From Macrostomum lignano (taxonomy: Eukaryota): DNA of 29,436 nt. Shown here piece after piece: positions 1-20,345 of this stretch. The translations under genes were made by a program, and so were the position numbers. Position 1 is the stretch's first letter, and each line of letters opens with the position of its first letter. The notes beneath the pieces are model-generated. The model did not search any database, had not been told where the DNA came from, and saw only the letters and a list, made by a program, of their open reading frames with translations. The stretch is from contig NIVC01004987.1 in the NCBI GenBank assembly GCA_002269645.1, positions 1-29,436 on the forward strand. The letters are read 5' to 3'.

Positions 1-9
1 CTAAACTGT

Positions 10-772
10 TATAGCTAAATGTAGCCTCTCCACTTTTGGGGTGCAGAGAAGGCTATAAACAAAGCTATTCCAAAACACTGTACATTGCCATATACATTCC
101 GCCCTATCGCCTGACCCTTGGTCTGGCTCTGGGGGAATGAGTAAGTGAGTGGCACAAACAACAGAAAAAGCAGACAAACTTTACATGCTAACAGTTTCTT
201 TTTCAATTGAGTTACAGAGTTGAAACTTTACATTTAGACAGAGAATGAGTCAATGAAGAATTGTGTCAAGTTTGAAATCAATCGCTTCACGTGGAGCAAA
301 CTTATGGCAGCCAAAATATAGTCGATTTTTGAACCCATTTTCCACATCTCGCAAGATAAGGGAAAGAGAGGCAGGCCGACGGAGGTTGGGGTGGCTGTCT
401 TGCTGAAAAAACAGCCTAATTTTAAAAGTGCACAGTGCCGTTCAGGATCAACTTTGAGACTCGAAATTTTACACAATTGTGTCAAAATAGTTTAAGATTG
501 TCTGTGTCAAATTAGAAGAGAATTGGTAGAAGTAGAGTGGCGCTATGGAGGATTTAGTGAAAAAATCGTGCATTTTGAGCAGTTTTTTGCACTTTTAGGT
601 AGAAAGACTCAAATTTAGGAAATTTAAATGTAGCCTAAGACATTCTCCATAGTGAGTTTACGGTGGGTGTAAAATTTGGTGTCATTTGGTTGAGCAGTTT
701 GGAAGTCCATAGCGAACAAAATTGTCTACAAACATACAGACATACAGAGTTTTGATTTTTATATGTAGAGAT
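10..772 (+). mobile_element. Non-autonomous Helitron-like (Lep1/DINE/HINE-type) repeat, 3' part
   Basis: The tail has the layout I recall for Lep1/DINE-type elements: AAATGTAGCCTAAGACATTCTCC ... GTAAAATTTGG ... TGGTTGAGCAGTTTGG ... GCGAACAAA ... ACAAACATACAGACATACAG ... TTTTTATATGTAGAGAT. TAAATGTAGCCT occurs twice (~17 and ~625). No Rep/helicase is present. Family and 5' end are uncertain. Confidence 0.5.
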
Positions 773-1601
773 CATAAAAACCATAAAACTCATAAGATGA
801 AAGTTCATAACTATTTGTGATTTATAAAATTTTCAAATTCCATGGAAACTAATCATGTAATTTTCTATAAAAAAACTTGAACAAAAAATGATGTTAACTA
901 GTGCATTGTATTTGGTGAGTGAAGCGAGTAAAGTAGAGATGTTTATAAAGTAGACAAAAATGTGTAACACACAAAAAAGGTCATTTATTGTCGCAAAGCC
1001 TAGAAAACCTAGCATAAGTTCCTAGGACCTTGGCGTACATTTTAGTATGAAGTGGCATAGATTTTTTAGGGGACTTTTTCCTCGGCATATATTATAACAT
1101 GATCCTGACTATGGTTAGAATAGTATATAATATATTATTTACAAGATGTAGACTGCCATGTAGGCAATTAAAACATTAGGTAGATGGCTACTATATATAT
1201 AAACACAAATCATGTTTTGGCAAGGTTTTTGGTAAATTTTAGCAAAAATGTTTTTTTAACAAATCATTTCATATTGACTTTCTTTAAATGCATCATGGGC
1301 GATTTTCCTCTTTCGTTCGTTAAATTATTTTTTCGATTTGAATCGGTGCGTAGAGGCGAAAAAGTGACGTGGCAGCATTTGAAATTGTGCCTATTGAAAA
1401 AATGATGTGGCAGTAGTGGAAAGGACATGGGGTTGCTGCTGACACATGTCTATGGCACTACTCACCTACTCGGTTCGTGGCGGAGTATAGGCAGCAGCTT
1501 GCACTCGCTCCTTGCTCCCCTTCCCACTCTCGCATGAGCTTTGACTTATCGCATTGAGTCTTCACTTGTTAAATTTTATTAAATTTTACTCAAACTGCAA
1601 C

Positions 1602-1898
1602 ATGGCTGGGCGCCCAGCGGCACCTACATTCATCGTCCCTCCTGGACAACTGCGTCCCTCGCTGGAGCTGTGCGACATAAACTTTACGATGCGCGAGCTG
1701 GCCAACATCACCCAGACGCCTAGAGACTGCATCAACTGGATGGCAACCTTCCATCTTCTGGCCAACCAACAGACATGCTCAACATGCCCCGGAGCCCCGG
1801 CGATGCGTCTGCAGCAGCGCACGGGTGATCGCTTTGTGGACAGGCTTGCTTGGGCATGTACCGGCTGCCATGGCCAGGTCTCCATAAGAAAGGGCTCT
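1602..1898 (+). pseudogene. N-terminal Zn-ribbon fragment of a Merlin (IS1595/ISXO2-like) transposase, no DDE domain
   Basis: ATG at 1602. The peptide LLANQQTCSTCPGAPAMRL...DRLAWACTGCHGQVSIRKGS matches the LL-x-CxxC-M-L...D...W-CxxC...SIRKGS pattern of eukaryotic IS1595-like transposases. Similarity stops after SIRKGS. No TIR pair found. Confidence 0.65.
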
Positions 1899-4782
1899 TT
1901 GCTGGGGCTCCAGTTGAACCATATTGGACTTTGTGAGACTCTCTGTATGCCAGAGCAAGCTACGGGACGCAGTGCCCTATTGTTGTCGTTTACTGTCGTT
2001 ACATGTCGTTTACCATTACCGTTTGTCTTTAGTTAAACAACTCCATCCAACTTTCCGAGAAAAATTTAAGTCCCAGCATCCCATTACTGTCGTTTTCTGA
2101 CATTACTCAGTAGTCACAACTTGTTTCTGTCGAAAAAATAATTTAACGAATGAAAGAGGAAAATCGCCGCATCATGCATTAAACTTTACTAAATATAAAA
2201 TTTTCTTTACCTTTGCCTAAAATATTTATAAAATATAACTTAATATTTAGATAATTTAGGACATATTATTACTCTTATTAATTTTAGCAGAACTTACCTG
2301 AGTAATTTCAGAAATTGACTGCTTTAAAGTCTTTTTGTTAAGGGAACCAACCAAATTTTCTATTTGGTTTAATGCAAATTGCAGAGAGTCTAGCATTGTT
2401 GATAGTAAATGCTTTGTAGGGCTAAACAGTAATAGTTTGATGCTAGTAACATGTCAAATGACAATTTTGACAATCAAAGCACAATTTAATGTTTTAAGTA
2501 AGAATTGTCAGACTACTAGGCTAGTATAGTGTAGGACTTGCTACACCTCTAACTTTATTCAAGTTCAACTTGACAGCAAAAAAAGGGGGCTAATGTTTCT
2601 CAAAGAATGCAGAAAGTAAAGGGTATTTTTATTAGTATTCAGTCTGTATCTCTTGCTATTTTAAAAATTATATTAGTAACTAGGGCTAAGCCTATTTTCG
2701 AGTACTAGTCTACTGTATTTAGGCCTATATAAATATATTGTGATTAAAAAATTAAGACATCTTAAATATCACCTAATGAGTACTCAGAAAAAAAGATTTA
2801 TTCATTGTTCACCATTCAGGTAATCATGTCAATCATTATTCTGTTATTCTGTTATTTACTGTCAATATTGACTGGCTTTAGAAGCTTGAAAACTGTAGAT
2901 ATTAATAAATAAATATTTATAACATATTTTTTGTCTTATAAGAAATTGTGTTTTTTACTTTAAATTAAAACCGACACCAAAAACAATAAAAAACTTTGAT
3001 ATAATGCGACAATTTGAGTCACGCTTTTTTTAAATAATCGTGCTTGTCGATGACTAATGTAAAAACTATGTTACAAATATAAATATTTATCACGATTGTC
3101 TCTATAACCAAATTCTTCGAGTATGAAGTCGGCCCACACCCCAGAGTGGCTAAAACGAAATCAAAGACGAAAAATATCAACAAGATGGGCCCACTCAGTG
3201 GGCCCGGCCATAAAGTCTTGATCCAATAGAACTACGCATTTTGCTGAAAATGATTAAATGCAACGATTTTTTATGCATGCAGAATCACTGCAGATTTTTC
3301 ATGGAAGTAACAATGCAAAGCAGTGAAGCATGCAGCTATGACTGAGAGGGTCATGGTTACCATTACCGCCCTGATGTCCCTGCAGTTGTTAAGTTCCATG
3401 CAATCAGCCGCGGTGGGCGGGGGAGTGACAGCTGGAACAGCAGCTCAGGAGGTGGGCCGTTAGCCCATACACCTTTCCCTATGCTTAGATGTAACCCACT
3501 GCAGTTAATCCAAGTGCAGGGTGACAACGGCGGTATGGGTGGGAGCAGGGAGCCATGAGGATCCCGATCACTGGTCGAGCAATCTCGGCCAGGCCATTGG
3601 CCAGCTCGTGGCCTCGGAATGGCCCGACTTCCCCTGGGAGCCACCTTAAAGACACCCTGTTGGGGGCGCCCTAAGCGGTTAGCAGGCACCATGGCACACT
3701 TGCTTTTTTCTTTTACATGGATACATGTATTTTCTTACCCTCTCCAATTAACATTTCGCTAGGTGAGCCGTTTTGCTGGTTGTCCATGTCCCATCCAGGT
3801 CATGCAATCTCACCCACACTTGTTCCGTTACATATTGTCGACGTCAACCCAAGCGCGTCACGATTAGTTTAGATGAAGATGATCTGTCCATCTGAATGTA
3901 AACTACATGTACATGTAGTTCATGTGGTTCATATTATACATACTGTATATACCGTATGTTTCATAGACAAATGAAATAGAAATAGAAATAACCAAGACGT
4001 TAATTGCCATTGCAGCAAAGCGAGTACTATATGTACATATAGTCAATAGTGTGTTGTTTAAATTTCTGACAGAATAGATTTCGCTAACCTCCCATTATTA
4101 TTTGCAAAAAATACAGACAGTAAAAATAAATTACGAGTAATATCCGTACGTAAAGCTTTACCAGTTTTTTAAGTAACTCCGCGTAATTTACCGATCTTTC
4201 TTACAAATTACTCGTACATACGATCCTACATGGTAGATAAGAAACGCATAATTTTTGGCATATTGGAAATTTAAAAGTTAAATTACTAAACTCTCGATCA
4301 TTAGCTCCAATGAGTTCCGTATCATTTTGAGTTGCCGGGGTGAATGGGGATGTCATCTTAAGCGCCGGCATAATGCTTTCATCCGGCCCTTAGAAGGGCA
4401 GAAAGAGTCAAAAGCAATTCAACTGAATAGTTGAATCTATTCACAGTTTCGTGTAGCGCGCTGTAGTATCTATTTTCTACCTAAGTACACTCGTATATAA
4501 AGTCTTTCTATCTTACACGCTGGAAAGTGAAAGTACTTCTACAAACATACGTGTAAACTTATTGAAATCATAGAAAGAACTGGAGATAGTGGCCAACTAT
4601 TTAATACTCGTACATGTAGGCGTTCATTGAAATCGTATCTTGGGATCATTACTTGTTTTGTCCTTTATACATTTCTGTACATAAGGAAGAGAAATACAAG
4701 AAATGTCCGTGGCGATTTGACCGTTGTGCAGCTCAAAGTGAAAAACTGACCACCGCAAGTTTTACTCATACTCTCCGCGACG

Positions 4783-6113
4783 CTACTCCTCATCATCTCC
4801 TCCTCCAGTTTCTTCGATCATCGGCTCAGGTTCGTCACGGTCCGACTCCGCTCCGACTGATGCTTCATCAGCCGGCTCGTCGGCGTCCACTTCTTCTTCG
4901 AAGTCATCGTCATCGGGCTCATCGCTTGCAAAATCGTCATCGGCTGTATCGTCGTCGTCGGAAACCGCTAAGCTACTTTGACGAGAGGAGACTGGGGAAC
5001 GCTCATCCTGCAGTGGCTCGTCTGGTTGGTTGGTTGGTTGGTTGGTTGGTTGGTTGGTTGGTTGGTTGGTTGGTTGGTTGGTTGGTTGGTTGGTTGGTTG
5101 GTTGGTTTGTTTGTTGGTTGGTTGTTTGGTTGGTTGGTTGGTTGGTTGGTTGGTTGGTTGGTTGGTTGGTTGGTTGGTTGGTTGGTTGGTTGGTTGGTTG
5201 GTTGGTTGGTTTGTTTGTTGGTTGGTTATTTGGTTGGTTGGTTGGTTGGTTGGTTGGTTGGTTGGTTGGTTATTTGGTTGGTTGGTTGGTTGGTTGGTTG
5301 GTTGGTTGGTTGGTTGGTTGGTTGGTTGTTGGTTGGTTGGTTGGTTGGTTGGTTGGTTGGTTGGTTGGTTGGTTGGTTGGTTGGTTGGTTGGTTGGTTGG
5401 TTGGTTGGTTGGTTGGTTGTTGGTTGGTTATTTGGTTGGTTGATCCAAAAAATCAAATCAAATCTCGATAGCTAACCTCGGTTGGCATTGGCATCATCGT
5501 GGTCCGGATCGCCCATCCCATCCACACCCATGTTCTCCAGCTCCTCGCGTCGTTCTTCGCGTCTCTCTCGCTCTCGCCGACGCTCCTCCTGCAACTCCAT
5601 ATTGTCGTTCATGACTTCCAGCGCTTCGTTTTCCATTCGGTAGAGCCAAGCTTCGCGCTCACGGTCAGTCAGCCGGTGATCATCGTCCCCGTCCAGAACC
5701 TGCGCAGCTAGCTGGCCTCGAGCGAAGGCCGCTTGTCTGAAAGAAATTTGAATTTGAGTACGAGCGTATCACCTAATGCAATTATTATCAATAGTTGACC
5801 AGCGCACTATAAAAAATTGACAAGGAGGGATGTTTGCGGCATCTGCAACGCTTCCAAACCTATAACAATTTACATGAACAGAAACATACTTTTGAAACCA
5901 ACATTGACTTCATATGAGTCACTGAAAGAGGATAGGCTACCTGTCACCGTCTGCAAAGTAAGCTTGCTGAGCCTCATCAGCACCAAGCTGTCCGTTAACC
6001 TCCAGTAGGCTGTGCCGTCGCTTGCTGCTCTCCAGAAATGCCACCAACTCTTCGCGTTTCGACTCGCGTTTAGCCAATTCTCGCTGACGCATTTTGTCCA
6101 CAGTATTTCCCAT
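4783..6113 (-). CDS. Spliced gene for a 223-aa highly acidic, Asp/Glu/Arg-rich protein of unknown family (coding exons 6113-5941, 5736-5477, 5021-4783)
   Basis: Both introns are GT-AG (TTTCAG/GTAGCC; TTTCAG/GTTAGC; CCAG) and phases match (2 then 1). 173+260+239=672 nt gives 223 aa plus TAG. Start context is ACAAATGG. An acceptor at 6122 implies a 5' UTR exon (candidate GTAAGG donor at 6352). ATTAAA lies at 4605-4600. Protein: [23 protein letters not shown]...[13 protein letters not shown]...[18 protein letters not shown]...[13 protein letters not shown]...GGGDDEE. Confidence 0.8.
5024..5442. repeat. (GGTT)n/(CCAA)n microsatellite, about 105 units with TTT, TAT and TGT interruptions, filling an intron
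   Basis: Seen directly. It lies between the donor at 5476 and the acceptor at 5023-5022. Confidence 0.98.
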
Positions 6114-6879
6114 TTGTGCGGCTGAAACTTGAAGCAGTACTAACTGGGCAACAGACAGCAATTGTGAGGAAAGACCGAGGACTCCAGAAATTGCGTATCG
6201 TTTTAGCTATTTGAAAGCACCCTGACAAAGTTGAATTTTTGTTTATGTTTAATACGCAGCAGAATCGGTTGGTGGCGTGGTGTCGGTCAAGTCAGGCTTT
6301 GGTATAGCTGGATAGTTGCAATTAAACAAACTTAACAACCCCCACCCCTTACTTGCAAGCGCGTTGTCCAGGGTTCAACAGCCAACCTTGCAACACTTGG
6401 TGGTGACGAAAAATGCGAGCAAACTTTCAGCTAGTTTGAATAAATCACTGAAACTTGCATTTAGGTTAGATCTTGGGGCTTAATTCCTGTTTAAGGTAGT
6501 CCTGGTAGCTCTCTGTAGCAGCACAGCAGAAAAAGGTAAAGCAGTTTCGTTGGGATGAAAGAAAATTACTTAAACTCTTCTTGATGAAAGAGTTAAGCGG
6601 GGTGCAACTATATTTTGATAATAGCCATCTAAGATTAACCTAACTGGGGCCTACGACAATTTACGAGTACCATCAATAATTTGATTGTCATCAATTGACT
6701 GCTGAACCTACTAGCCCTATCCTATATTTGTTCTAAACCCTAACCTAAATTCTCGGCAAGTTAATTTATGCATGGCAGTCATGCAATTGTCGCGCTCCCC
6801 CATTACTATGCGGTAGGTCTGATCGATTGACTAGTGAAAGTAGCATTTAGGGCATTTCATATACATTGTTTTATTACTT

Positions 6880-6940
6880 TACCAATCGAAATGCTGATTT
6901 GTTACGTAGTTAACCAACACGGAAGTGCTGGTCACGTACT
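6880..6940. promoter_or_regulatory. Candidate bidirectional promoter core between the two divergent acidic genes (copy at ~16138-16198)
   Basis: CCAAT (6882-6886), Ets-type CGGAAGTG (6920-6927) and GTCACGTA (6931-6938) cluster within 60 nt between oppositely oriented genes. These short motifs can occur by chance. Confidence 0.3.
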
Positions 6941-7628
6941 TTCCATTTCCCGTCATTGATATCAACCCCTAACCGGAGACAATACATTGCATTGATTAAT
7001 GATCAATCATCAAACTCTTGTTTGCAGGGTGTTCGCTCACAACACATTTTTCTGCTGAAACTTCGGGTTCTTTCTGCGATGAAAGGAATTAAACAAGCGT
7101 AGTTCTCACGGTTCCATACAATTTTTTATCCTGCGACACCCGTCTGTAGAGCATTCGCCAAACAGCATATTGTCTGCCGCTTGGTCTTGTCAAATTATAT
7201 TATATTAAATAATATTAAAGCTCTCGCTGGGCAATGCAGACTCTGACCCTACAGTTTGGCATTGTGGCATTTCGCTTGGACGAAAGATACTGTAATTTGA
7301 GACAGACTGGAAATGGGCAAGGCAGATCAGAGTCTACCCCACTGCGATAAACTGGTTAATTGAAGCATCTCCCTGCCAGCTGCGCGCGTTTTTTCTTCAT
7401 CGTTTAAAACCCTTGCCTAGGTGCGCAAGGTGAATTGAAGTAAAGACCACCCCCAGAACGCCTTGCCCCGAGCCTTAGCAACCTGAGCCACCTGCGCGGG
7501 CTCTTTTTTGAAGTAATTTATGCAGAAAAGAAGAGCTAAAAAAGCAAATCAACATTTCCACTGAAAAAAAGCAGAGAGATTAACAGACCAGCAACCAGAG
7601 CGTAGAAAATCAAGATCGAAACGGCAAG

Positions 7629-8492
7629 ATGACGAGTCAAGAAGCTGAGAATCAGAATCGTGAAGACGAAGAAGCGAAAGCGATGCATCGAGAAGAAGAA
7701 AAAGCAGAGCATCAGGGAGACGAGGACGTGGAGCACCAAGGAGACGAGGATGCAGAGCATCAGGGAGACGAGGACGTGGAGCACCAAGGAGACGAGGATG
7801 CAGAGCATCAGGGAGACGAGGATGCAGAGCATCAGGGAGACGAGGATGCAGAGCATCAGGGAGACGAGGATGCAGAGCATCAGGGAGACGAGGATGCAGA
7901 GCACCAGGGAGACGAGGATGCAGAGCGCCAGGGAGACGAGGATGCACAGCACCAAGGAGACGAGGATGCAGAGCGCCAAGGAGACGAGGATGCAGAGCAT
8001 CTGGAAAAAGAGGCTTCAAAGCACCATAAAGAAGAGAATGCGGAGCGCAAGGAAGAAGACGATATGAAGCACCGGGAAGCGGAGTTTGTGAAACGCCACG
8101 AAGACAGTGATAACAGAAAGCAGCTAGAGCACAAAAAGGAGCAAGACATAAAGCTACCAACAATGAAAGTAGAGGTCCGAGAAGCTTTTCAGGATGATGA
8201 CAACTCGGAAGAGAAGAAGTGCAATGAATTTCAACAATCGGATTCAACTCCAACGTGGCAACAATCTAAGCAACTGCCTCCTTTGCGCAGCTACGTGTTG
8301 TCGAAACGAAGTGGCAAGACTGGTCGGCAAGATCAGCAGAAGCTGGCACCAAATCGGGTGATGATGGAGGCAGCTCAGCTGCTGCCAAAACTTCGACATT
8401 CTCGTCCCGGCATCGGATATTACGGACGGGTGCGCGGGCAAGCCGCGAACAGGTCTGTTGACCTGCGGTCGAGTCACGAACCGGCAGGTCAG
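7629..8492 (+). CDS. Large exon of an acidic His/Asp/Glu repeat protein (12x HQGDEDAE); this copy lacks its putative last exon
   Basis: Open frame from ATG 7629 with an in-frame 24-bp repeat. A perfect CAG|GTAAGT donor lies at 8492/8493 (phase 0). Unspliced, the frame ends at 8615 (328 aa). The true start is uncertain: acceptors at 7525 and 7586, in-frame TAA at 7581. Confidence 0.55.
7710..7997 (+). repeat. 24-bp coding minisatellite, 12 copies (second array 16967-17254)
   Basis: Units of CATCAGGGAGACGAGGATGCAGAG; 288/24=12. Confidence 0.97.
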
Positions 8493-8685
8493 GTAAGTGG
8501 CGGATGGCTTTGTGGCGATTACACATGCTCTGAAATCAGAGTAAAATTGGTAATTCAATCTAATCCTACTGCCCACAAAAGTAGCACACTATCACATCAT
8601 AGAAATCGACAATGACACTATGCAGTACACATTGTCACGTAAAAGTACGGAGTGACTCATTCCAACTATTCATATGAGCGTAGAC

Positions 8686-10115
8686 CACAGCAATCGGAGT
8701 GACACTCTCCAAAATTAACCACACTCACAACACAGCAATCGGAGTGACACTCTCCAAATGCACCACACTCGCGACACAGCAATCGGAGTGAACACTCTCC
8801 AAATGCACCACACTCACAACACAGCAATCGGAGTGAACACTCTCCAAATGCACCACACTCGCGACACAGCAATCGGAGTGACACTCTCCAAATACACCAC
8901 ACTCACGACACAGCAATGGGAGTGACACTCTCCAAATGCACCACACTCGCGACACAGCAATCGGAGTGAACACTCTCCAAATGCACCACACTCACGACAC
9001 AGCAATCGGAGTGAACACTCTCCAAATTCACCACACTCGCGACACAGCAATCGGAGTGACACTCTCCAAATACACCACACTCACGACACAGCAATCGGAG
9101 TGACACTCTCCAAATACACCACACTCACAACACAGCAATGGGAGTGACACTCTCCAAATGCACCACACTCGCGACACAGCAATCGGAGTGAACACTCTCC
9201 AAATGCACCACACTCACGACACAGCAATCGGAGTGAACACTCTCCAAATTCACCACACTCGCGACACAGCAATCGGAGTGACACTCTCCAAATACACCAC
9301 ACTCACGACACAGCAATCGGAGTGACACTCTCCAAATACACCACACTCACGACACAGCAATCGGAGTGAACACTCTCCAAATGCACCACACTCGCGACAC
9401 AGCAATCGGAGTGACACTCTCCAAATACACCACACTCACGACACAGCAATCGGAGTGACACTCTCCAAATGCACCACACTCGCGACACAGCAATCGGAGT
9501 GAACACTCTCCAAATGCACCACACTCACAACACAGCAATCGGAGTGAACACTCTCCAAATGCACCACACTCGCGACACAGCAATCGGAGTGACACTCTCC
9601 AAATACACCACACTCACAACACAGCAATGGGAGTGACACTCTCCAAATGCACCACACTCGCGACACAGCAATCGGAGTGAACACTCTCCAAATGCACCAC
9701 ACTCACGACACAGCAATCGGAGTGAACACTCTCCAAATTCACCACACTCGCGACACAGCAATCGGAGTGACACTCTCCAAATTCACCACACTCGCGACAC
9801 AGCAATCGGAGTGACACTCTCCAAATACACCACACTCACGACACAGCAATCGGAGTGACACTCTCCAAATACACCACACTCACAACACAGCAATGGGAGT
9901 GACACTCTCCAAATGCACCACACTCGCGACACAGCAATCGGAGTGAACACTCTCCAAATGCACCACACTCACGACACAGCAATCGGAGTGAACACTCTCC
10001 AAATTCACCACACTCGCGACACAGCAATCGGAGTGACACTCTCCAAATACACCACACTCACGACACAGCAATCGGAGTGACACTCTCCAAATACACCACA
10101 CTCACGACACAGCAA
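8686..10115. repeat. 44/45-bp satellite, about 32 monomers with higher-order structure
   Basis: Unit CACAGCAATCGGAGTGA(A)CACTCTCCAAAT[G/A/T]CACCACACTC[G/A]C[G/A]A. Confidence 0.97.
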
Positions 10116-10825
10116 TTGTATATAGTGCATTGTATTTGGTGAGTGAAGCGAGTAAAGTAGAGATGTTTATAAAGTAGACAAAAATGTGTAACACACAAAA
10201 AAGGTCATTTATTGTCGCAAAGCCTAGAAAACCTAGCATAAGTTCCTAGGACCTTGGCGTACATTTTAGTATGAAGTGGCATAGATTTTTTAGGGGACTT
10301 TTTCCTCGGCATATATTATAACATGATCCTGACTATGGTTAGAATAGTATATAATATATTATTTACAAGATGTAGACTGCCATGTAGGCAATTAAAACAT
10401 TAGGTAGATGGCTACTATATATATAAACACAAATCATGTTTTGGCAAGGTTTTTGGTAAATTTTAGCAAAAATGTTTTTTTAACAAATCATTTCATATTG
10501 ACTTTCTTTAAATGCATCATGGGCGATTTTCCTCTTTCGTTCGTTAAATTATTTTTTCGATTTGAATCGGTGCGTAGAGGCGAAAAAGTGACGTGGCAGC
10601 ATTTGAAATTGTGCCTATTGAAAAAATGATGTGGCAGTAGTGGAAAGGACATGGGGTTGCTGCTGACACATGTCTATGGCACTACTCACCTACTCGGTTC
10701 GTGGCGGAGTATAGGCAGCAGCTTGCACTCGCTCCTTGCTCCCCTTCCCACTCTCGCATGAGCTTTGACTTATCGCATTGAGTCTTCACTTGTTAAATTT
10801 TATTAAATTTTACTCAAACTGCAAC

Positions 10826-11122
10826 ATGGCTGGGCGCCCAGCGGCACCTACATTCATCGTCCCTCCTGGACAACTGCGTCCCTCGCTGGAGCTGTGCGAC
10901 ATAAACTTTACGATGCGCGAGCTGGCCAACATCACCCAGATGCCTAGAGACTGCATCAACTGGATGGCAACCTTCCATCTTCTGGCCAACCAACAGACAT
11001 GCTCAACATGCCCCGGAGCCCCGGCGATGCGTCTGCAGCAGCGCACGGGTGATCGCTTTGTGGACAGGCTTGCTTGGGCATGTACCGGCTGCCATGGCCA
11101 GGTCTCCATAAGAAAGGGCTCT
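10826..11122 (+). pseudogene. Second copy of the Merlin-like Zn-ribbon fragment
   Basis: Same as 1602-1898 except ACG>ATG (T>M) at 10941. Confidence 0.65.
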
Positions 11123-14005
11123 TTGCTGGGGCTCCAGTTGAACCATATTGGACTTTGTGAGACTCTCTGTATGCCAGAGCAAGCTACGGGACGCAGTGCC
11201 CTATTGTTGTCGTTTACTGTCGTTACATGTCGTTTACCATTACCGTTTGTCTTTAGTTAAACAACTCCATCCAACTTTCCGAGAAAAATTTAAGTCCCAG
11301 CATCCCATTACTGTCGTTTTCTGACATTACTCAGTAGTCACAACTTGTTTCTGTCGAAAAAATAATTTAACGAATGAAAGAGGAAAATCGCCGCATCATG
11401 CATTAAACTTTACTAAATATAAAATTTTCTTTACCTTTGCCTAAAATATTTATAAAATATAACTTAATATTTAGATAATTTAGGACATATTATTACTCTT
11501 ATTAATTTTAGCAGAACTTACCTGAGTAATTTCAGAAATTGACTGCTTTAAAGTCTTTTTGTTAAGGGAACCAACCAAATTTTCTATTTGGTTTAATGCA
11601 AATTGCAGAGAGTCTAGCATTGTTGATAGTAAATGCTTTGTAGGGCTAAACAGTAATAGTTTGATGCTAGTAACATGTCAAATGACAATTTTGACAATCA
11701 AAGCACAATTTAATGTTTTAAGTAAGAATTGTCAGACTACTAGGCTAGTATAGTGTAGGACTTGCTACACCTCTAACTTTATTCAAGTTCAACTTGACAG
11801 CAAAAAAAAGGGGGGCTAATGTTTCTCAAAGAATGCAGAAAGTAAAGGGTATTTTTATTAGTATTCAGTCTGTATCTCTTGCTATTTTAAAAATTATATT
11901 AGTAACTAGGGCTAAGCCTATTTTCGAGTACTAGTCTACTGTATTTAGGCCTATATAAATATATTGTGATTAAAAAATTAAGACATCTTAAATATCACCT
12001 AATGAGTACTCAGAAAAAAAGATTTATTCATTGTTCACCATTCAGGTAATCATGTCAATCATTATTCTGTTATTCTGTTATTTACTGTCAATATTGACTG
12101 GCTTTAGAAGCTTGAAAACTGTAGATATTAATAAATAAATATTTATAACATATTTTTTGTCTTATAAGAAATTGTGTTTTTACTTTAAATTAAAACCGAC
12201 ACCAAAAACAATAAAAAACTTTGATATAATGCGACAATTTGAGTCACGCTTTTTTTAAATAATCGTGCTTGTCGATGACTAATGTAAAAACTATGTTACA
12301 AATATAAATATTTATCACGATTGTCTCTATAACCAAATTCTTCGAGTATGAAGTCGGCCCACACCCCAGAGTGGCTAAAACGAAATCAAAGACGAAAAAT
12401 ATCAACAAGATGGGCCCACTCAGTGGGCCCGGCCATAAAGTCTTGATCCAATAGAACTACGCATTTTGCTGAAAATGATTAAATGCAACGATTTTTTATG
12501 CATGCAGAATCACTGCAGATTTTTCATGGAAGTAACAATGCAAAGCAGTGAAGCATGCAGCTATGACTGAGAGGGTCATGGTTACCATTACCGCCCTGAT
12601 GTCCCTGCAGTTGTTAAGTTCCATGCAATCAGCCGCGGTGGGGGGGAGTGACAGCTGGAACAGCAGCTCAGGAGGTGGGCCGTTAGCCCATACACCTTTC
12701 CCTATGCTTAGATGTAACCCACTGCAGTTAATCCAAGTGCAGGGTGACAACGGCGGTATGGGTGGGAGCAGGGAGCCATGAGGATCCCGATCACTGGTCG
12801 AGCAATCTCGGCCAGGCCATTGGCCAGCTCGTGGCCTCGGAATGGCCCGACTTCCCCTGGGAGCCACCTTAAAGACACCCTGTTGGGGGCGCCCTAAGCG
12901 GTTAGCAGGCACCATGGCACACTTGCTTTTTTCTTTTACATGGATACATGTATTTTCTTACCCTCTCCAATTAACATTTCGCTAGGTGAGCCGTTTTGCT
13001 GGTTGTCCATGTCCCATCCAGGTCATGCAATCTCACCCACACTTGTTCCGTTACATATTGTCGACGTCAACCCAAGCGCGTCACGATTAGTTTAGATGAA
13101 GATGATCTGTCCATCTGAATGTAAACTACATGTACATGTAGTTCATGTGGTTCATATTATACATACTGTATATACCGTATGTTTCATAGACAAATGAAAT
13201 AGAAATAGAAATAACCAAGACGTTAATTGCCATTGCAGCAAAGCGAGTACTATATGTACATATAGTCAATAGTGTGTTGTTTAAATTTCTGACAGAATAG
13301 ATTTCGCTAACCTCCCATTATTATTTGCAAAAAATACAGACAGTAAAAATAAATTACGAGTAATATCCGTACGTAAAGCTTTACCAGTTTTTTAAGTAAC
13401 TCCGCGTAATTTACCGATCTTTCTTACAAATTACTCGTACATACGATCCTACATGGTAGATAAGAAACGCATAATTTTTGGCATATTGGAAATTTAAAAG
13501 TTAAATTACTAAACTCTCGATCATTAGCTCCAATGAGTTCCGTATCATTTTGAGTTGCCGGGGTGAATGGGGATGTCATCTTAAGCGCCGGCATAATGCT
13601 TTCATCCGGCCCTTAGAAGGGCAGAAAGAGTCAAAAGCAATTCAACTGAATAGTTGAATCTATTCACAGTTTCGTGTAGCGCGCTGTAGTATCTATTTTC
13701 TACCTAAGTACACTCGTATATAAAGTCTTTCTATCTTACACGCTGGAAAGTGAAAGTACTTCTACAAACATACGTGTAAACTTATTGAAATCATAGAAAG
13801 AACTGGAGATAGTGGCCAACTATTTAATACTCGTACATGTAGGCGTTCATTGAAATCGTATCTTGGGATCATTACTTGTTTTGTCCTTTATACATTTCTG
13901 TACATAAGGAAGAGAAATACAAGAAATGTCCGTGGCGATTTGACCGTTGTGCAGCTCAAAGTGAAAAACTGACCACCGCAAGTTTTACTCATACTCTCCG
14001 CGACG

Positions 14006-15370
14006 CTACTCCTCATCATCTCCTCCTCCAGTTTCTTCGATCATCGGCTCAGGTTCGTCACGGTCCGACTCCGCTCCGACTGATGCTTCATCAGCCGGCT
14101 CGTCGGCGTCCACTTCTTCTTCGAAGTCATCGTCATCGGGCTCATCGCTTGCAAAATCGTCATCGGCTGTATCGTCGTCGTCGGAAACCGCTAAGCTACT
14201 TTGACGAGAGGAGACTGGGGAACGCTCATCCTGCAGTGGCTCGTCTGGTTGGTTGGTTGGTTGGTTGGTTGGTTGGTTGGTTGGTTGGTTGGTTGGTTGG
14301 TTGGTTGGTTGGTTGGTTGGTTGGTTGGTTGGTTGGTTGGTTGGTTGGTTTGTTTGTTGGTTGGTTGTTTGGTTGGTTGGTTGGTTGGTTGGTTGGTTGG
14401 TTGGTTGGTTGGTTGGTTGGTTGGTTGGTTGGTTGGTTGGTTGGTTGGTTGGTTTGTTTGTTGGTTGGTTATTTGGTTGGTTGGTTGGTTGGTTGGTTGG
14501 TTGGTTGGTTGGTTATTTGGTTGGTTGGTTGGTTGGTTGGTTGGTTGGTTGGTTGGTTGGTTGGTTGGTTGTTTGGTTGGTTGGTTGGTTGGTTGGTTGG
14601 TTGGTTGGTTGGTTGGTTGGTTGGTTGGTTGGTTGGTTGGTTGGTTGGTTGGTTGGTTGGTTGGTTGGTTGGTTTGTTGGTTGGTTATTTGGTTGGTTGA
14701 TCCAAAAAATCAAATCAAATCTCGATAGCTAACCTCGGTTGGCATTGGCATCATCGTGGTCCGGATCGCCCATCCCATCCACACCCATGTTCTCCAGCTC
14801 CTCGCGTCGTTCTTCGCGTCTCTCTCGCTCTCGCCGACGCTCCTCCTGCAACTCCATATTGTCGTTCATGACTTCCAGCGCTTCGTTTTCCATTCGGTAG
14901 AGCCAAGCTTCGCGCTCACGGTCAGTCAGCCGGTGATCATCGTCCCCGTCCAGAACCTGCGCAGCTAGCTGGCCTCGAGCGAAGGCCGCTTGTCTGAAAG
15001 AAATTTGAATTTGAGTACGAGCGTATCACCTAATGCAATTATTATCAATAGTTGACCAGCGCACTATAAAAAATTGACAAGGAGGGATGTTTGCGGCATC
15101 TGCAACGCTTCCAAACCTATAACAATTTACATGAACAGAAACATACTTTTGAAACCAACATTGACTTCATATGAGTCACTGAAAGAGGATAGGCTACCTG
15201 TCACCGTCTGCAAAGTAAGCTTGCTGAGCCTCATCAGCACCAAGCTGTCCGTTAACCTCCAGTAGGCTGTGCCGTCGCTTGCTGCTCTCCAGAAATGCCA
15301 CCAACTCTTCGCGTTTCGACTCGCGTTTAGCCAATTCTCGCTGACGCATTTTGTCCACAGTATTTCCCAT
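14006..15370 (-). CDS. Second intact copy of the 223-aa acidic gene (exons 15370-15198, 14993-14734, 14244-14006)
   Basis: Exons appear identical to copy 1. The microsatellite intron is 34 nt longer. Confidence 0.8.
14247..14699. repeat. (GGTT)n microsatellite, copy 2 (about 113 units)
   Basis: Seen directly. Longer than copy 1, with shifted interruptions. Confidence 0.98.
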
Positions 15371-16885
15371 TTGTGCGGCTGAAACTTGAAGCAGTACTAA
15401 CTGGGCAACAGACAGCAATTGTGAGGAAAGACCCGAGGACTCCAGAAATTGCGTATCGTTTTAGCTATTTGAAAGCACCCTGACAAAGTTGAATTTTTGT
15501 TTATGTTTAATACGCAGCAGAATCGGTTGGTGGCGTGGTGTCGGTCAAGTCAGGCTTTGGTATAGCTGGATAGTTGCAATTAAACAAACTTAACAACCCC
15601 CACCCCTTACTTGCAAGCGCGTTGTCCAGGGTTCAACAGCCAACCTTGCAACACTTGGTGGTGACGAAAAATGCGAGCAAACTTTCAGCTAGTTTGAATA
15701 AATCACTGAAACTTGCATTTAGGTTAGATCTTGGGGCTTAATTCCTGTTTAAGGTAGTCCTGGTAGCTCTCTGTAGCAGCACAGCAGAAAAAGGTAAAGC
15801 AGTTTCGTTGGGATGAAAGAAAATTACTTAAACTCTTCTTGATGAAAGAGTTAAGCGGGGTGCAACTATATTTTGATAATAGCCATCTAAGATTAACCTA
15901 ACTGGGGCCTACGACAATTTACGAGTACCATCAATAATTTGATTGTCATCAATTGACTGCTGAACCTACTAGCCCTATCCTATATTTGTTCTAAACCCTA
16001 ACCTAAATTCTCGGCAAGTTAATTTATGCATGGCAGTCATGCAATTGTCGCGCTCCCCCATTACTATGCGGTAGGTCTGATCGATTGACTAGTGAAAGTA
16101 GCATTTAGGGCATTTCATATACATTGTTTTATTACTTTACCAATCGAAATGCTGATTTGTTACGTAGTTAACCAACACGGAAGTGCTGGTCACGTACTTT
16201 CCATTTCCCGTCATTGATATCAACCCCTAACCGGAGACAATACATTGCATTGATTAATGATCAATCATCAAACTCTTGTTTGCAGGGTGTTCGCTCACAA
16301 CACATTTTTCTGCTGAAACTTCGGGTTCTTTCTGCGATGAAAGGAATTAAACAAGCGTAGTTCTCACGGTTCCATACAATTTTTTATCCTGCGACACCCG
16401 TCTGTAGAGCATTCGCCAAACAGCATATTGTCTGCCGCTTGGTCTTGTCAAATTATATTATATTAAATAATATTAAAGCTCTCGCTGGGCAATGCAGACT
16501 CTGACCCTACAGTTTGGCATTGTGGCATTTCGCTTGGACGAAAGATACTGTAATTTGAGACAGACTGGAAATGGGCAAGGCAGATCAGAGTCTACCCCAC
16601 TGCGATAAACTGGTTAATTGAAGCATCTCCCTGCCAGCTGCGCGCGTTTTTTCTTCATCGTTTAAAACCCTTGCCTAGGTGCGCAAGGTGAATTGAAGTA
16701 AAGACCACCCCCAGAACGCCTTGCCCGAGCCTTAGCAACCTGAGCCACCTGCGCGGGCTCTTTTTTGAAGTAATTTATGCAGAAAAGAAGAGCTAAAAAA
16801 GCAAATCAACATTTCCACTGAAAAAAAGCAGAGAGATTAACAGACCAGCAACCAGAGCGTAGAAAATCAAGATCGAAACGGCAAG

Positions 16886-19544
16886 ATGACGAGTCAAGAA
16901 GCTGAGAATCAGAATCGTGAAGACGAAGAAGCGAAAGCGATGCATCGAGAAGAAGAAAAAGCAGAGCATCAGGGAGACGAGGACGTGGAGCACCAAGGAG
17001 ACGAGGATGCAGAGCATCAGGGAGACGAGGACGTGGAGCACCAAGGAGACGAGGATGCAGAGCATCAGGGAGACGAGGATGCAGAGCATCAGGGAGACGA
17101 GGATGCAGAGCATCAGGGAGACGAGGATGCAGAGCATCAGGGAGACGAGGATGCAGAGCACCAGGGAGACGAGGATGCAGAGCGCCAGGGAGACGAGGAT
17201 GCACAGCACCAAGGAGACGAGGATGCAGAGCGCCAAGGAGACGAGGATGCAGAGCATCTGGAAAAAGAGGCTTCAAAGCACCATAAAGAAGAGAATGCGG
17301 AGCGCAAGGAAGAAGACGATATGAAGCACCGGGAAGCGGAGTTTGTGAAACGCCACGAAGACAGTGATAACAGAAAGCAGCTAGAGCACAAAAAGGAGCA
17401 AGACATAAAGCTACCAACAATGAAAGTAGAGGTCCGAGAAGCTTTTCAGGATGATGACAACTCGGAAGAGAAGAAGTGCAATGAATTTCAACAATCGGAT
17501 TCAACTCCAACGTGGCAACAATCTAAGCAACTGCCTCCTTTGCGCAGCTACGTGTTGTCGAAACGAAGTGGCAAGACTGGTCGGCAAGATCAGCAGAAGC
17601 TGGCACCAAATCGGGTGATGATGGAGGCAGCTCAGCTGCTGCCAAAACTTCGACATTCTCGTCCCGGCATCGGATATTACGGACGGGTGCGCGGGCAAGC
17701 CGCGAACAGGTCTGTTGACCTGCGGTCGAGTCACGAACCGGCAGGTCAGGTAAGTGGCGGATGGCTTTGTGGCGATTACACATGCTCTGAAATCAGAGTA
17801 AAATTGGTAATTCAATCTAATCCTACTGCCCACAAAAGTAGCACACTATCACATCATAGAAATCGACAATGACACTATGCAGTACACATTGTCACGTAAA
17901 AGTACGGAGTGACTCATTCCAACTATTCATATGAGCGTAGACCACAGCAATCGGAGTGACACTCTCCAAAATTAACCACACTCACAACACAGCAATCGGA
18001 GTGACACTCTCCAAATGCACCACACTCGCGACACAGCAATCGGAGTGAACACTCTCCAAATGCACCACACTCACAACACAGCAATCGGAGTGAACACTCT
18101 CCAAATGCACCACACTCGCGACACAGCAATCGGAGTGACACTCTCCAAATACACCACACTCACAACACAGCAATGGGAGTGACACTCTCCAAATGCACCA
18201 CACTCGCGACACAGCAATCGGAGTGAACACTCTCCAAATGCACCACACTCACGACACAGCAATCGGAGTGAACACTCTCCAAATTCACCACACTCGCGAC
18301 ACAGCAATCGGAGTGACACTCTCCAAATACACCACACTCACGACACAGCAATCGGAGTGACACTCTCCAAATACACCACACTCACAACACAGCAATGGGA
18401 GTGACACTCTCCAAATGCACCACACTCGCGACACAGCAATCGGAGTGAACACTCTCCAAATGCACCACACTCACGACACAGCAATCGGAGTGAACACTCT
18501 CCAAATTCACCACACTCGCGACACAGCAATCGGAGTGACACTCTCCAAATACACCACACTCACGACACAGCAATCGGAGTGACACTCTCCAAATACACCA
18601 CACTCACGACACAGCAATCGGAGTGAACACTCTCCAAATGCACCACACTCGCGACACAGCAATCGGAGTGACACTCTCCAAATACACCACACTCACGACA
18701 CAGCAATCGGAGTGACACTCTCCAAATGCACCACACTCGCGACACAGCAATCGGAGTGAACACTCTCCAAATGCACCACACTCACAACACAGCAATCGGA
18801 GTGAACACTCTCCAAATGCACCACACTCGCGACACAGCAATCGGAGTGACACTCTCCAAATACACCACACTCACAACACAGCAATGGGAGTGACACTCTC
18901 CAAATGCACCACACTCGCGACACAGCAATCGGAGTGAACACTCTCCAAATGCACCACACTCACGACACAGCAATCGGAGTGAACACTCTCCAAATTCACC
19001 ACACTCGCGACACAGCAATCGGAGTGACACTCTCCAAATTCACCACACTCGCGACACAGCAATCGGAGTGACACTCTCCAAATACACCACACTCACGACA
19101 CAGCAATCGGAGTGACACTCTCCAAATACACCACACTCACAACACAGCAATGGGAGTGACACTCTCCAAATGCACCACACTCGCGACACAGCAATCGGAG
19201 TGAACACTCTCCAAATGCACCACACTCACGACACAGCAATCGGAGTGAACACTCTCCAAATTCACCACACTCGCGACACAGCAATCGGAGTGACACTCTC
19301 CAAATACACCACACTCACGACACAGCAATCGGAGTGACACTCTCCAAATACACCACACTCACGACACAGCAATCGGAGTGAACACTCTCCAAATGCACCA
19401 CACTCGCGACACAGCAATCGGAGTGACACTCTCCAAATACACCACACTCACGACACAGCAATCGGAGTGACACTCAAAATTCAGACCAAAAACTATCATC
19501 AAGAATCGCAGTTTAGTTCTCAAAGGTCAAAATGTTCTGAATGA
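16886..19544 (+). CDS. Putative complete copy of the HQGDEDAE-repeat gene: exon 16886-17749 plus terminal exon 19485-19544 (~307 aa), with the satellite as intron
   Basis: CAG|GTAAGT donor at 17749. The first acceptor after the satellite is AAATTCAG|ACC (19484), giving TKNYHQESQFSSQRSKCSE* in phase 0. AATAAA lies at 19963. The terminal exon is inferred. Confidence 0.4.
17943..19475. repeat. 44/45-bp satellite, copy 2 (about 34-35 monomers, includes the natural right end)
   Basis: Same order of monomer variants as copy 1. Ends ...GGAGTGACACTC|AAAATTCAG. Confidence 0.97.
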
Positions 19545-20153
19545 AGTTCCGAGCGTCCCACTGACGCACCACCACCCCTCCCCTGAACCAGACGGCTCCC
19601 CTCGTCCTCGGTCCAAGTCAGGAGCTGACCAGCCAATTCTACAGCAGCAACAATAAGGTCGGTCAGCAAGTTGGAGTTAAGCGGGTAACTACAGCGGCTT
19701 CAGTGAACGGTCGCTACCCATTCAGCCGGATTATCTACCCTAATCTGATTGGCCAGAGCGTCGGACAGCCAATCAGGATGGCGCAGCGGCAGCAGCGAAG
19801 CCTCACAATGCACAGCAGCGAGGGGACATTCGTTCTGAGGCACAAGCTGCGCCAGAGCGCTGGCTGCCTAGCGCGAATCATGGACAGCTCAAGCACTGGA
19901 GAGGCGGCCGTGAGACGGGCGATCTCGCGAGCAAGTAAATACTAACCTCAGACGGTTAACGCAATAAACAGTCGTGTTGATATTGTCACATCGATATACC
20001 TCTATTGATATTAAATTATATAACCATTTTTGCGGATAAAGTCTTGCAACGCATTTTTATTTAAAACAACCTCAAATAGCAGCCAAATATGCAACTCAGA
20101 GTTTTCAGGACGCGATTTCACAACCAAAACTATCAAAAAAGCAGTACAAGAAT

Positions 20154-20345
20154 GGGAGCCGTAGCCCAGTGGTCCAGCGCGGCGCTCTGATGTGCCAGCG
20201 GCCCAGGCTCGATTCCAAGTGCAGTCACATTAATTTGGGGCTAAATTGAATCTTAGCTTGGCTCTGCTCGTGCAATTAACGCCCTTGAGGACCAACCCGC
20301 CAGGCATAGTGAAGTGTACATGCCTAGCGATAAATAAAGTTGGGA
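20154..20345 (+). mobile_element. Degenerate tRNA-derived SINE, family A
   Basis: GGGAGCCGTAGCCCAGTGG (A box) and GGCTCGATTCC (degenerate B box), then an unrelated body and an A-rich TAAATAAA. The 3' end is approximate. Confidence 0.55.

What the first reader, a model, noticed from the sequence alone, without database searches (positions are those of the whole stretch)
899..19475. Very recent 9.2-kb tandem duplication of a head-to-head pair of unassigned acidic-protein genes
Seen: two copies are nearly identical, including the order of satellite monomers. Each carries the whole 223-aa minus-strand gene, the shared upstream region and the main exon of the HQGDEDAE gene. Only copy 2 has that gene's putative last exon. 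Inference: the event doubles one gene and truncates its partner. Two divergent, disordered acidic proteins under one promoter could be a co-regulated module (mineral or metal binding, or chaperone-like). An amplifying cassette cannot be excluded. So few substitutions over 9 kb argue against two ordinary haplotypes placed in tandem, but not against a read or assembly artefact.
Basis: partly seen in the sequence, partly recalled or inferred. Interest (0 to 1): 0.7.

Follow-up and report, generated by a model that had tools for sequence, protein, structure and literature searches.

The report
Young 9.2-kb tandem duplication, flatworm genome
This is a genuine, very recent 9.2-kb head-to-tail duplication in the flatworm Macrostomum lignano; it doubles one small lineage-specific gene and adds a spare first exon to each of its two neighbours, one of them CNOT1, which makes it a clean but ordinary structural variant.

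Summary
The window is the whole contig NIVC01004987.1 of the Macrostomum lignano Mlig_3_7 assembly. Copy 1 is 899-10116, a 6-nt filler (TGTATA) follows, and copy 2 is 10123-19373. The copies share the same 32-monomer order of the 44-bp satellite.

The same duplication, with the identical junction, is in a second contig (NIVC01001632.1). Four copy-specific differences recur there, so it is not an assembler artefact. Most other differences are private to one contig and look like PacBio consensus noise.

A homeologous locus (NIVC01003535.1, about 2.8% mismatch) is single-copy and has only 2.5 satellite monomers. It shows the state before duplication. The event is roughly 250 times younger than the subgenome split.

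The unit therefore holds:
- CNOT1 coding exon 1 and the sequence upstream of it;
- the whole 223-aa gene (Mlig029469);
- the divergent intergenic region;
- exon 1 and most of the intron of Mlig000178.

Only the 223-aa gene is fully doubled. Both flanking genes stay intact and each gains a redundant distal first exon. The breakpoints share no homology, which points to end-joining or a replicative template switch, not unequal crossing-over. I found no evidence for a mineral-binding, chaperone or amplifying-cassette role.

The parts
899..10116 (.). Copy 1 of the duplicated unit (9,218 nt)
   Evidence: Self-BLAST and alignment. The left edge is exact: the bases before 899 (GTTAAC) differ from those before 10123 (TGTATA).
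10117..10122 (.). 6-nt junction filler TGTATA that matches neither flank. ATTGTAT, which spans its first 5 nt, recurs 12 nt downstream.
   Evidence: The identical junction string CAGCAAT-TGTATA-TAGTGCATTG is in contig NIVC01001632.1.
10123..19373 (.). Copy 2 of the duplicated unit (9,251 nt)
19374..19475 (.). Last 102 nt of the original 44-bp satellite array, beyond the right breakpoint and not duplicated
2298..2396 (-). CNOT1 coding exon 1, proximal copy: ATG at 2396, 33 codons, donor CAG|GTAAGT
   Evidence: Sequence. Joined to exon 2 from the near-identical scaffold, it aligns with human CNOT1 residues 3-167 at E 3.6e-44, collinear across the exon junction.
11522..11620 (-). CNOT1 coding exon 1, distal duplicated copy
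   Evidence: ORF 11480-11620. The 2,582-aa GenBank model in contig NIVC01001632.1 starts exactly at this ATG (L003 13992).
1298..2168 (.). 871-bp DNA-transposon insertion in CNOT1 intron 1, with 39-bp terminal inverted repeats and an 8-bp target-site duplication GCATCATG at 1290-1297 and 2169-2176. It holds the Cys-rich ORF 1554-2036. The second copy is at about 10522-11392. The one reproducible substitution between the two unit copies (1717C/10941T) lies inside it.
   Evidence: the empty site is in homeolog L005 at about 3893-3900. for the substitution.
4783..6113 (-). 223-aa gene Mlig029469, copy 1. Exons 6113-5941, 5736-5478 and 5022-4783.
14006..15370 (-). 223-aa gene Mlig029469, copy 2, with an identical protein
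5023..5442 (.). (TGGT)n, read as (CAAC)n on the gene strand, microsatellite that fills intron 2 of the 223-aa gene. Copy 2 is at 14246-14699 and is about 8 units longer.
   Evidence: A 20-nt length difference between the copies recurs in both contigs.
6114..7628 (.). 1.5-kb divergent intergenic region between the two head-to-head start codons. Copy 2 is at 15371-16885. It is a presumed shared promoter region.
   Evidence: Coordinates. Promoter function is inferred, not tested.
7629..8492 (+). Exon 1 of Mlig000178 (the HQGDEDAE-repeat gene), distal orphan copy, with donor CAG|GTAAGT
16886..17749 (+). Exon 1 of Mlig000178, proximal copy, contiguous with the last exon. Its DNA is identical to 7629-8492.
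8686..10116 (.). 44-bp satellite in the Mlig000178 intron, copy 1 (32.2 monomers), cut by the right breakpoint
17943..19475 (.). 44-bp satellite in the Mlig000178 intron, copy 2 (34.5 monomers, the full original array)
   Evidence: The homeolog has only 2.5 monomers.
19592..19945 (+). Single last exon of Mlig000178 (117 codons plus stop), outside the duplication

Best explanation
This is a genuine, germline-fixed, non-homologous tandem segmental duplication of 9.2 kb on one subgenome of Macrostomum lignano (line DV1).

The original locus read, on the + strand:
- the CNOT1 body, to the left of the window, on the minus strand;
- CNOT1 intron 1, carrying an 871-bp DNA-transposon insertion;
- CNOT1 exon 1;
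- the 223-aa gene Mlig029469, on the minus strand;
- a 1.5-kb divergent intergenic region;
- Mlig000178 exon 1, on the plus strand;
- an intron in which a 44-bp repeat had grown from about 2.5 to about 34.5 monomers;
- the last exon of Mlig000178.

A break or stalled fork inside the satellite, 102 nt from its distal end, was joined to a point in CNOT1 intron 1 (window 899). The two points share no homology, and 6 nt of filler were added. This is the signature of end-joining (classical or polymerase-theta type) or of a replicative template switch. It is not the signature of unequal crossing-over.

Consequences:
- The internal gene Mlig029469, with its upstream region, is present twice with identical coding sequence.
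- CNOT1 and Mlig000178 each keep one intact copy.
- Each of those two genes also gains a second, distal, sequence-identical first exon with its upstream sequence. That exon can still splice to the unique downstream exons across the extra 9.2 kb.
- If the distal promoters fire, they drive convergent transcription across the duplicated segment.

Shown here: the structure, the junction, the pre-duplication state, the gene content and the young age. Inferred: the repair pathway, use of the distal promoters and any dosage effect.
For: 1. Structure and junction.
2. Independent reproduction: contig NIVC01001632.1 matches window 1-23291 at 99.76% and has the same CAGCAAT-TGTATA-TAGTGCATTG junction. 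It is a different molecule or haplotype, because its 65-bp satellite is over 3.2 kb long against 0.54 kb in the window.
3. Copy-specific variants recur in both contigs: 1717C/10941T, the A-run at 2577, the C-run at 7466, and a 20-nt microsatellite length difference. So the two copies are distinct genomic sequences.
4. Other differences are singletons in four-way and three-way alignments. This fits a Canu PacBio-CLR assembly polished with Pilon (PMC5730564).
5. Pre-duplication state: homeolog NIVC01003535.1 is collinear and single-copy. Its HQGDEDAE gene spans only 1,901 bp and its intron holds 2.5 satellite monomers. Mismatches are 96/3372, 83/3103, 30/1094 and 81/2573, about 2.8%, close to the published subgenome SNP divergence of 1.4-2.4% (PMC10733133).
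6. Age: one reproducible substitution in about 8.8 kb of non-microsatellite sequence, against 2.8%.
7. CNOT1 exon 1 lies in the unit. A CNOT1 model with Pfam CNOT1 domains lies to the left in the near-identical scaffold.
8. There is no homology between the breakpoints, and no terminal repeats or target-site duplication.
Against: No raw reads or depth could be examined. The exact copy number (2 rather than 3 or more) rests on the assembler, and both supporting contigs come from the same PacBio data set and the same Canu run.

A third near-identical representation, scaffold NIVC01000852.1, has a 3,044-N gap exactly over the duplicated region. That gap estimate fits neither one copy (8.3 kb) nor two copies (17.6 kb), so the assembly graph was unresolved here. 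That haplotype could differ in copy number.

The repair pathway is inferred from a single junction. The partial match of the filler to nearby sequence (7 nt) could be chance.
Confidence: 0.87

Rival explanations
1. Assembly artefact: a single-copy locus, or two haplotypes or homeologs, was wrongly laid out in tandem by Canu.
For: Mlig_3_7 is highly redundant, with many collapsed or expanded paralogs. The locus is represented three times at about 99.6-99.8% identity, and one representation has a scaffold gap over the region. Most copy-to-copy differences are consensus noise.
Against: An overlap assembler cannot invent a junction between two non-homologous points with a 6-nt filler; reads must contain it. 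The same junction and four copy-specific variants recur in a second contig with a different satellite array length. True homeologs differ by about 2.8% here, not 0.01%.
Confidence: 0.07
2. Unequal crossing-over (non-allelic homologous recombination) between repeats flanking the unit.
For: The right breakpoint lies in a 1.5-kb tandem array, a classic substrate for unequal exchange.
Against: The left breakpoint (899) lies in unique AT-rich sequence with no 44-bp monomer nearby. There is no shared sequence at the two breakpoints, and there is a 6-nt insertion. Recombination between homologous repeats leaves a seamless hybrid repeat, not a filler.
Confidence: 0.02
3. Mobile or amplifying cassette: the 9.2-kb unit is a transposable or rolling-circle element that copies itself.
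For: The unit contains an internal 871-bp DNA transposon with terminal inverted repeats. The genome is rich in transposable elements.
Against: The unit ends have no terminal inverted or direct repeats and no target-site duplication. Copy 2 runs seamlessly into the rest of the satellite and the last exon, as expected for a tandem duplication. Lookups of the two proteins find them at this locus (two near-identical contigs), with the HQGDEDAE protein cluster also in the gapped scaffold and the homeolog. The homeolog has one copy in the same gene order. The unit is made of host gene parts, including CNOT1 exon 1.
Confidence: 0.02

Closest known systems
Non-recurrent tandem duplications formed by end-joining or replicative template switching (classical or polymerase-theta end-joining; FoSTeS/MMBIR), as described for copy-number variants in human, Drosophila and plants (my own knowledge; general background papers listed)
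   Same: Head-to-tail copies of kilobase scale, breakpoints without homology, a few inserted bases at the junction, and one breakpoint in a replication-difficult tandem array.
   Different: Here it appears fixed on at least two near-identical chromosome copies of an inbred neopolyploid flatworm. The pathway is inferred from one junction only.
Partial gene duplications with intronic breakpoints that create extra first exons or alternative promoters, or chimeric genes, as catalogued for young duplicates in Drosophila (my own knowledge)
   Same: Both breakpoints are intronic. The flanking genes are only partly duplicated and the internal gene is wholly duplicated.
   Different: The flanking genes point outward (divergent). 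No new chimeric coding sequence can form, only redundant distal first exons. One flanking gene is the conserved CCR4-NOT scaffold CNOT1.
Paralogous blocks of Mlig_3_7 derived from whole-genome duplication or aneuploidy (PMC5730564, PMC10733133)
   Same: Near-identical sequence appears more than once in the assembly. The three near-identical contigs and the 2.8%-diverged homeolog belong to this phenomenon.
   Different: Those blocks lie on separate contigs and typically differ by about 2%. The feature here is an intra-contig tandem repeat with about 0.01% divergence and a defined junction.

Membership tests
Tandem segmental duplication (non-homologous type) | Two adjacent direct copies, head to tail, on one molecule | tested here: met
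Tandem segmental duplication (non-homologous type) | A novel junction joins the unit's right end to its left end, and the distal copy continues uninterrupted into the original flank | tested here: met
   satellite | TGTATA | 899-equivalent. The array then continues 102 nt and runs into the last exon.
Tandem segmental duplication (non-homologous type) | No extended homology between the two breakpoints | tested here: met
Tandem segmental duplication (non-homologous type) | An unduplicated (ancestral) arrangement exists at an orthologous or homeologous locus | tested here: met
   L005, NIVC01003535.1: single copy and collinear
Tandem segmental duplication (non-homologous type) | Read-level support: junction-spanning reads and doubled depth relative to a single-copy reference | not testable with these tools
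   No reads were available. The nearest substitute is the second contig with the same junction and the same copy-specific variants.
Unequal crossing-over / non-allelic homologous recombination duplication | Homologous repeats at both breakpoints and a seamless hybrid junction | tested here: not met
   the left breakpoint is unique sequence and there is a 6-nt filler.
Transposable or rolling-circle cassette | Terminal repeats, a target-site duplication, and copies at unlinked sites | tested here: not met
CNOT1 (CCR4-NOT complex subunit 1), for the exon at 2298-2396 and 11522-11620 | N-terminal sequence collinear with CNOT1 from residue about 3 onward, and the rest of the gene carrying CNOT1 domains | tested here: met
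   Exon 1 joined to exon 2 matches human CNOT1 residues 3-167 at E 3.6e-44. The neighbouring model in the near-identical scaffold has Pfam CNOT1_HEAT, TTP_bind, CAF1_bind and Not1. The 2,582-aa model starts at the copy-2 ATG.
   No Pfam family. No relative outside M. lignano in 5.8 billion and 1.84 billion protein sets. Only the composition (D+E 33% and 22%, His 5%) fits, and that is not diagnostic. Signal peptides were not tested.

The most novel reading that the evidence does not exclude
The duplication may be a still-segregating copy-number variant among the near-identical chromosome copies of line DV1; the gapped third scaffold could hide a different copy number. It may also already have functional effects. 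It would double the dose of a Macrostomum-restricted gene under purifying selection. It would give the essential deadenylase scaffold CNOT1 a second promoter and first exon 9.2 kb upstream. It would set up convergent, potentially double-stranded-RNA-forming transcription across the segment. That would make it a very early snapshot of how partial duplications rewire promoters in a neopolyploid.
Probability: 0.12. Interest if true: 0.4.

Novelty: new member of a known kind. Interest (0 to 1): 0.2.

Why it matters
It matters mainly in practical terms.

- **Annotation.** The GenBank models for CNOT1 (in contig NIVC01001632.1) and Mlig000178 (in both contigs) are drawn from the distal first exons across the whole second copy. 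One copy of the 223-aa gene is swallowed by the CNOT1 model in NIVC01001632.1. Anyone designing RNAi, in-situ probes, CRISPR guides or promoter constructs for these genes needs the true structure.
- **Assembly.** The 29-kb contig is the piece that bridges a 3,044-N gap in scaffold NIVC01000852.1.
- **Biology.** This is a well-resolved case of a post-polyploidy tandem duplication. It has an exact junction, an ancestral state preserved in the homeolog, and a clear order of events: transposon insertion, then satellite expansion, then duplication. It is an ordinary kind of event and gives no evidence of a new system.

Tried and rejected
- **Rfam and tRNA scans of the window:** nothing found.
- **Pfam on both acidic proteins, the paralog and small ORFs:** no family. 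The only signal was a sub-threshold zinc-finger hit on the transposon ORF.
- **My own spliced 373-aa model:** wrong splice sites. The true model, P0002, came from the homolog search.
- **Third homolog search, using the 46-aa CNOT1 exon-1 ORF:** no candidates (after the too-short query). This was a wasted search. The point was settled instead from coordinates and a PDB sequence search of the joined exons.
- **Literature and supplement searches for Mlig000178, Mlig029469 and Mlig027284:** no hits, so no expression data were found.
- **Search for a longer template for the filler:** none of 8 nt or more nearby.
- **N-myristoylation of the MGNTVDK N-terminus:** considered, but position 6 is Asp rather than the usual Ser/Thr (my own knowledge of the motif), so I do not claim it.
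- a failed anchor produced useless output. It was redone correctly.
- **Structure prediction:** not run. Both proteins are largely low-complexity with almost no alignment depth, so a model would not be informative.
Full report
**Identity of the window.** A search with the spliced minus-strand protein returned one protein at 100% identity, the hypothetical protein BOX15_Mlig029469g1 of Macrostomum lignano (223 aa). Locating that protein showed that the window is the whole 29,436-bp contig NIVC01004987.1 of assembly GCA_002269645.1, known as Mlig_3_7. That assembly was made with Canu 1.4 from PacBio CLR reads of the inbred DV1 line. It was polished with Pilon and scaffolded with SSPACE, and it is known to be highly redundant (PMC5730564). 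DV1 carries three paralogous subgenomes that differ by about 1.4-2.4% in SNPs (PMC10733133).

**The observation.**
- Self-BLAST aligns 899-10116 with 10123-19373 at 99.535% over 9,255 columns, with 2 mismatches and 41 gap columns.
- The base-by-base list has two substitutions outside the microsatellite (1717C/10941T and 8907G/18164A). It also has five 1-2 nt run-length indels and length differences in a (TGGT)n microsatellite.
- The 44-bp satellite at the right end of each copy is identical in monomer order.
- A 6-nt filler, TGTATA (10117-10122), separates the copies.
- Copy 2's satellite runs 102 nt further to 19475. This is the part of the original array distal to the breakpoint.

**Artefact or real?** Four representations of the locus exist in the assembly.
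1. The window.
2. Contig NIVC01001632.1 (256,663 bp). Locus L003 matches window 1-23291 at 99.76%, with 9 mismatches. It contains both copies and exactly the same junction string. Its 65-bp satellite is over 3.2 kb long, against 0.54 kb in the window, so it is a different molecule or haplotype.
3. Scaffold NIVC01000852.1 (locus L006). Its left part ends at window position about 121. A run of 3,044 N follows, and its right part equals window 17708-29436 at 99.6%. The window contig is in effect the piece that bridges that gap.
4. Contig NIVC01003535.1 (locus L005), a homeolog with about 2.8% mismatches.

A four-way alignment of the two copies from each of the two complete contigs shows copy-specific states that recur in both contigs:
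- 1717C/10941T;
- one extra A in the run at 2577;
- C4 against C3 at 7466;
- a 20-nt microsatellite length difference.

All other differences, including 8907/18164, are private to one sequence. The same holds in a three-way alignment over 17708-22700, and it fits residual CLR consensus error.

An overlap assembler cannot create a junction between two non-homologous points with a filler unless reads contain it. That junction and those variants are reproduced in a second contig. I therefore regard the duplication as real (about 0.85-0.9). I could not inspect reads, so the exact copy number and the state of the gapped scaffold remain unverified.

**Ancestral state and timing.**
- The homeolog L005 is collinear and single-copy. 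Its HQGDEDAE gene spans 1,901 bp instead of 12.3 kb, and a 230-aa partner gene lies head-to-head with it.
- Its intron holds only 2.5 monomers (110 bp) of the 44-bp repeat.
- It lacks window 1-1110 and 1298-2168.
- The second missing segment is an 871-bp DNA transposon with 39-bp terminal inverted repeats and an 8-bp target-site duplication, GCATCATG. The homeolog shows the empty site.
- The order of events on this subgenome was therefore: insertions into CNOT1 intron 1 and growth of the satellite from about 2.5 to about 34.5 monomers (these two in unknown order), then the tandem duplication, then one substitution plus slippage changes.
- One reproducible substitution in about 8.8 kb, against about 2.8% between homeologs, puts the duplication at roughly 1/250 of the subgenome divergence time. 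The Poisson error on a single event is wide.

**Gene content.**
- *Mlig029469 (223 aa), minus strand.* Its three exons are 6113-5941, 5736-5478 and 5022-4783 in copy 1, with the copy-2 gene at 14006-15370. Both copies encode identical proteins.
  - Intron 2 is almost entirely the (CAAC)n microsatellite, whose end supplies the acceptor AG.
  - Against the homeolog, the coding sequence differs at 8 of 672 nt. Six changes are synonymous, one is non-synonymous, and one turns the stop TAG into CAG, giving 230 aa. This is a real gene under purifying selection.
  - Its only detectable relative among 1.84 billion representative proteins is an M. lignano paralog, Mlig027284 (210 aa, E 1.5e-11). The two share the MGN...RELAKR N-terminus and an RLTDR.REA.LY.MEN motif.
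- *Mlig000178, plus strand.* Exon 1 is 7629-8492, and 16886-17749 in copy 2, with identical DNA. The donor is CAG|GTAAGT. The single last exon is 19592-19945.
  - The genome encodes 405 aa. The annotated 373-aa product lacks four of the 8-residue repeats.
  - The homeolog encodes 493 aa because its 24-bp coding repeat has 23-25 units rather than 15.
- *Composition.* Mlig029469 has D+E 32.7% and pI 4.1. The 405-aa Mlig000178 product has D+E 22.5%, His 5.2% and pI 5.0. Neither protein has a Pfam family.

The ORF at 11480-11620 (minus strand), with its twin whose ATG is at 2396, begins MLDSLQFALNQIENLVGSLNKKTLKQSISEITQ and ends at a CAG|GTAAGT donor.
- The 2,582-aa GenBank model in contig NIVC01001632.1 starts exactly at the copy-2 ATG (L003 13992).
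- In the near-identical scaffold, a 2,379-aa model with Pfam CNOT1_HEAT, TTP_bind, CAF1_bind and Not1 domains lies to the left.
- An open frame there, preceded by the acceptor ttcctag|, continues LVNQHGFEAERHLYRCLF....
- Exon 1 joined to that frame aligns with human CNOT1 residues 3-167 at E 3.6e-44, without a gap at the exon junction.

So the left breakpoint (899) lies in CNOT1 intron 1, 1.4 kb from the donor. Exon 2 lies about 5.6 kb to the left of the window. Intron 1 is about 7.9 kb from the proximal exon 1 and about 17.2 kb from the distal one.

**Mechanism and consequences.** The two breakpoints share no sequence. The left one lies in unique AT-rich DNA and the right one inside a satellite monomer. 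Six nucleotides are inserted. ATTGTAT, which covers five of the six, recurs 12 nt downstream, but no longer template exists.
- This excludes unequal crossing-over. It fits end-joining with a small, possibly templated, insertion, or a replicative template switch, plausibly started by a break or stalled fork in the tandem array. This is an inference from established knowledge of such junctions.
- The unit has no terminal repeats or target-site duplication. It occurs only here and is single-copy in the homeolog, so it is not a mobile or amplifying cassette.
- Both breakpoints are intronic and the flanking genes point outward. Each flanking gene therefore keeps an intact copy and gains an identical distal first exon with its upstream sequence. 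No chimeric coding sequence can arise.
- Only Mlig029469 is completely doubled.
- The GenBank models use the distal exons: Mlig000178 as 7629-19945, and CNOT1 from the copy-2 exon. This probably reflects how identical, multi-mapping exons were resolved. It is not evidence that the distal promoters are preferred.
- If they are used, transcription from them converges across the 9.2-kb segment.

**Verdict.** The unit also includes the 5' end of CNOT1, and the functional speculations have no support. The feature is an ordinary kind of event, a young non-homologous tandem duplication. It is unusually well resolved and is useful chiefly for correcting the annotation and the scaffold gap. Interest 0.2.

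Noticed in passing
window 1298-2168 (second copy about 10522-11392); empty site at L005 about 3893-3900: An 871-bp non-autonomous DNA transposon with 39-bp terminal inverted repeats (GGCGATTTTCC...) and an 8-bp target-site duplication GCATCATG. It carries a Cys-rich ORF (1554-2036) and was inserted in CNOT1 intron 1 on this subgenome only. The superfamily was not determined; an 8-bp duplication fits hAT or Merlin.
   Followed up: partly
window 5023-5477 and 14246-14734; L005 6771-7800: Intron 2 of the 223-aa gene is almost entirely a (CAAC)n microsatellite, whose last repeat leads into the acceptor AG. Its length is about 105, 113 and 257 units in copy 1, copy 2 and the homeolog.
   Followed up: partly
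window 7704-8063 and 16961-17320; L005 10077-10699: The 24-bp coding minisatellite (HQGDEDAE) varies between 15 and about 24 units, giving 405 aa against 493 aa. The GenBank 373-aa product is four repeats shorter than the genome encodes, probably from collapse of the repeat in the transcript assembly.
   Followed up: partly
L006 (NIVC01000852.1) 6929-9972: A 3,044-N scaffold gap sits exactly where the duplicated region belongs, and the window contig overlaps both gap edges (window 1-121 and 17708-29436). The gap size fits neither one copy (8.3 kb) nor two copies (17.6 kb). The CNOT1 and Mlig000178 models there are truncated by the gap.
   Followed up: partly
window 26967-27506; L003 about 29050 to beyond 32290; L005 18522-21401: The 65-bp satellite has 8.3 copies in the window and scaffold 852, more than 50 in contig 1632 and 44 in the homeolog. 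This is either a real large length polymorphism between near-identical chromosome copies or a collapsed array.
   Followed up: no
window about 20000-23800, minus strand: A Cys-loop ligand-gated ion-channel gene (Pfam Neur_chan_LBD and Neur_chan_memb) lies tail-to-tail with Mlig000178. Its introns hold a 16-bp satellite (21653-21917) and a 15-bp satellite (22724-23291), and a 67-bp array lies at 24111-26113. An older ML2-based model (UniRef A0A1I8HVW9, 748 aa) wrongly fuses this receptor, antisense Mlig000178 sequence and the 223-aa gene.
   Followed up: partly
L003 13992 down to 1 (contig NIVC01001632.1): The 2,582-aa CNOT1 model starts at the distal (copy 2) exon 1 and spans all of copy 1. 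As a result, copy 1's 223-aa gene is not annotated separately in that contig. The protein index did not retrieve this model from its own first 33 residues.
   Followed up: partly
window 4783-4785; L005 about 6531: The stop codon TAG of the 223-aa gene is CAG in the homeolog, which extends that product to 230 aa.
   Followed up: yes
window 20631-20732 and 28719-28820: A 102-nt inverted repeat pair (94% complementary) lies 8 kb apart in the right flank. A similar piece also occurs inverted in L005 and L006. It is probably a pair of copies of a short dispersed element.
   Followed up: no
window contig, contig 1632 and scaffold 852: Three near-identical (over 99.6%) representations plus one homeolog at 2.8% do not match the expected pattern of three subgenomes each about 2% apart. 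They may be over-split redundant contigs from extra copies of the large chromosome, or recent homogenisation between two subgenomes. The third diverged homeolog was not found.
   Followed up: no
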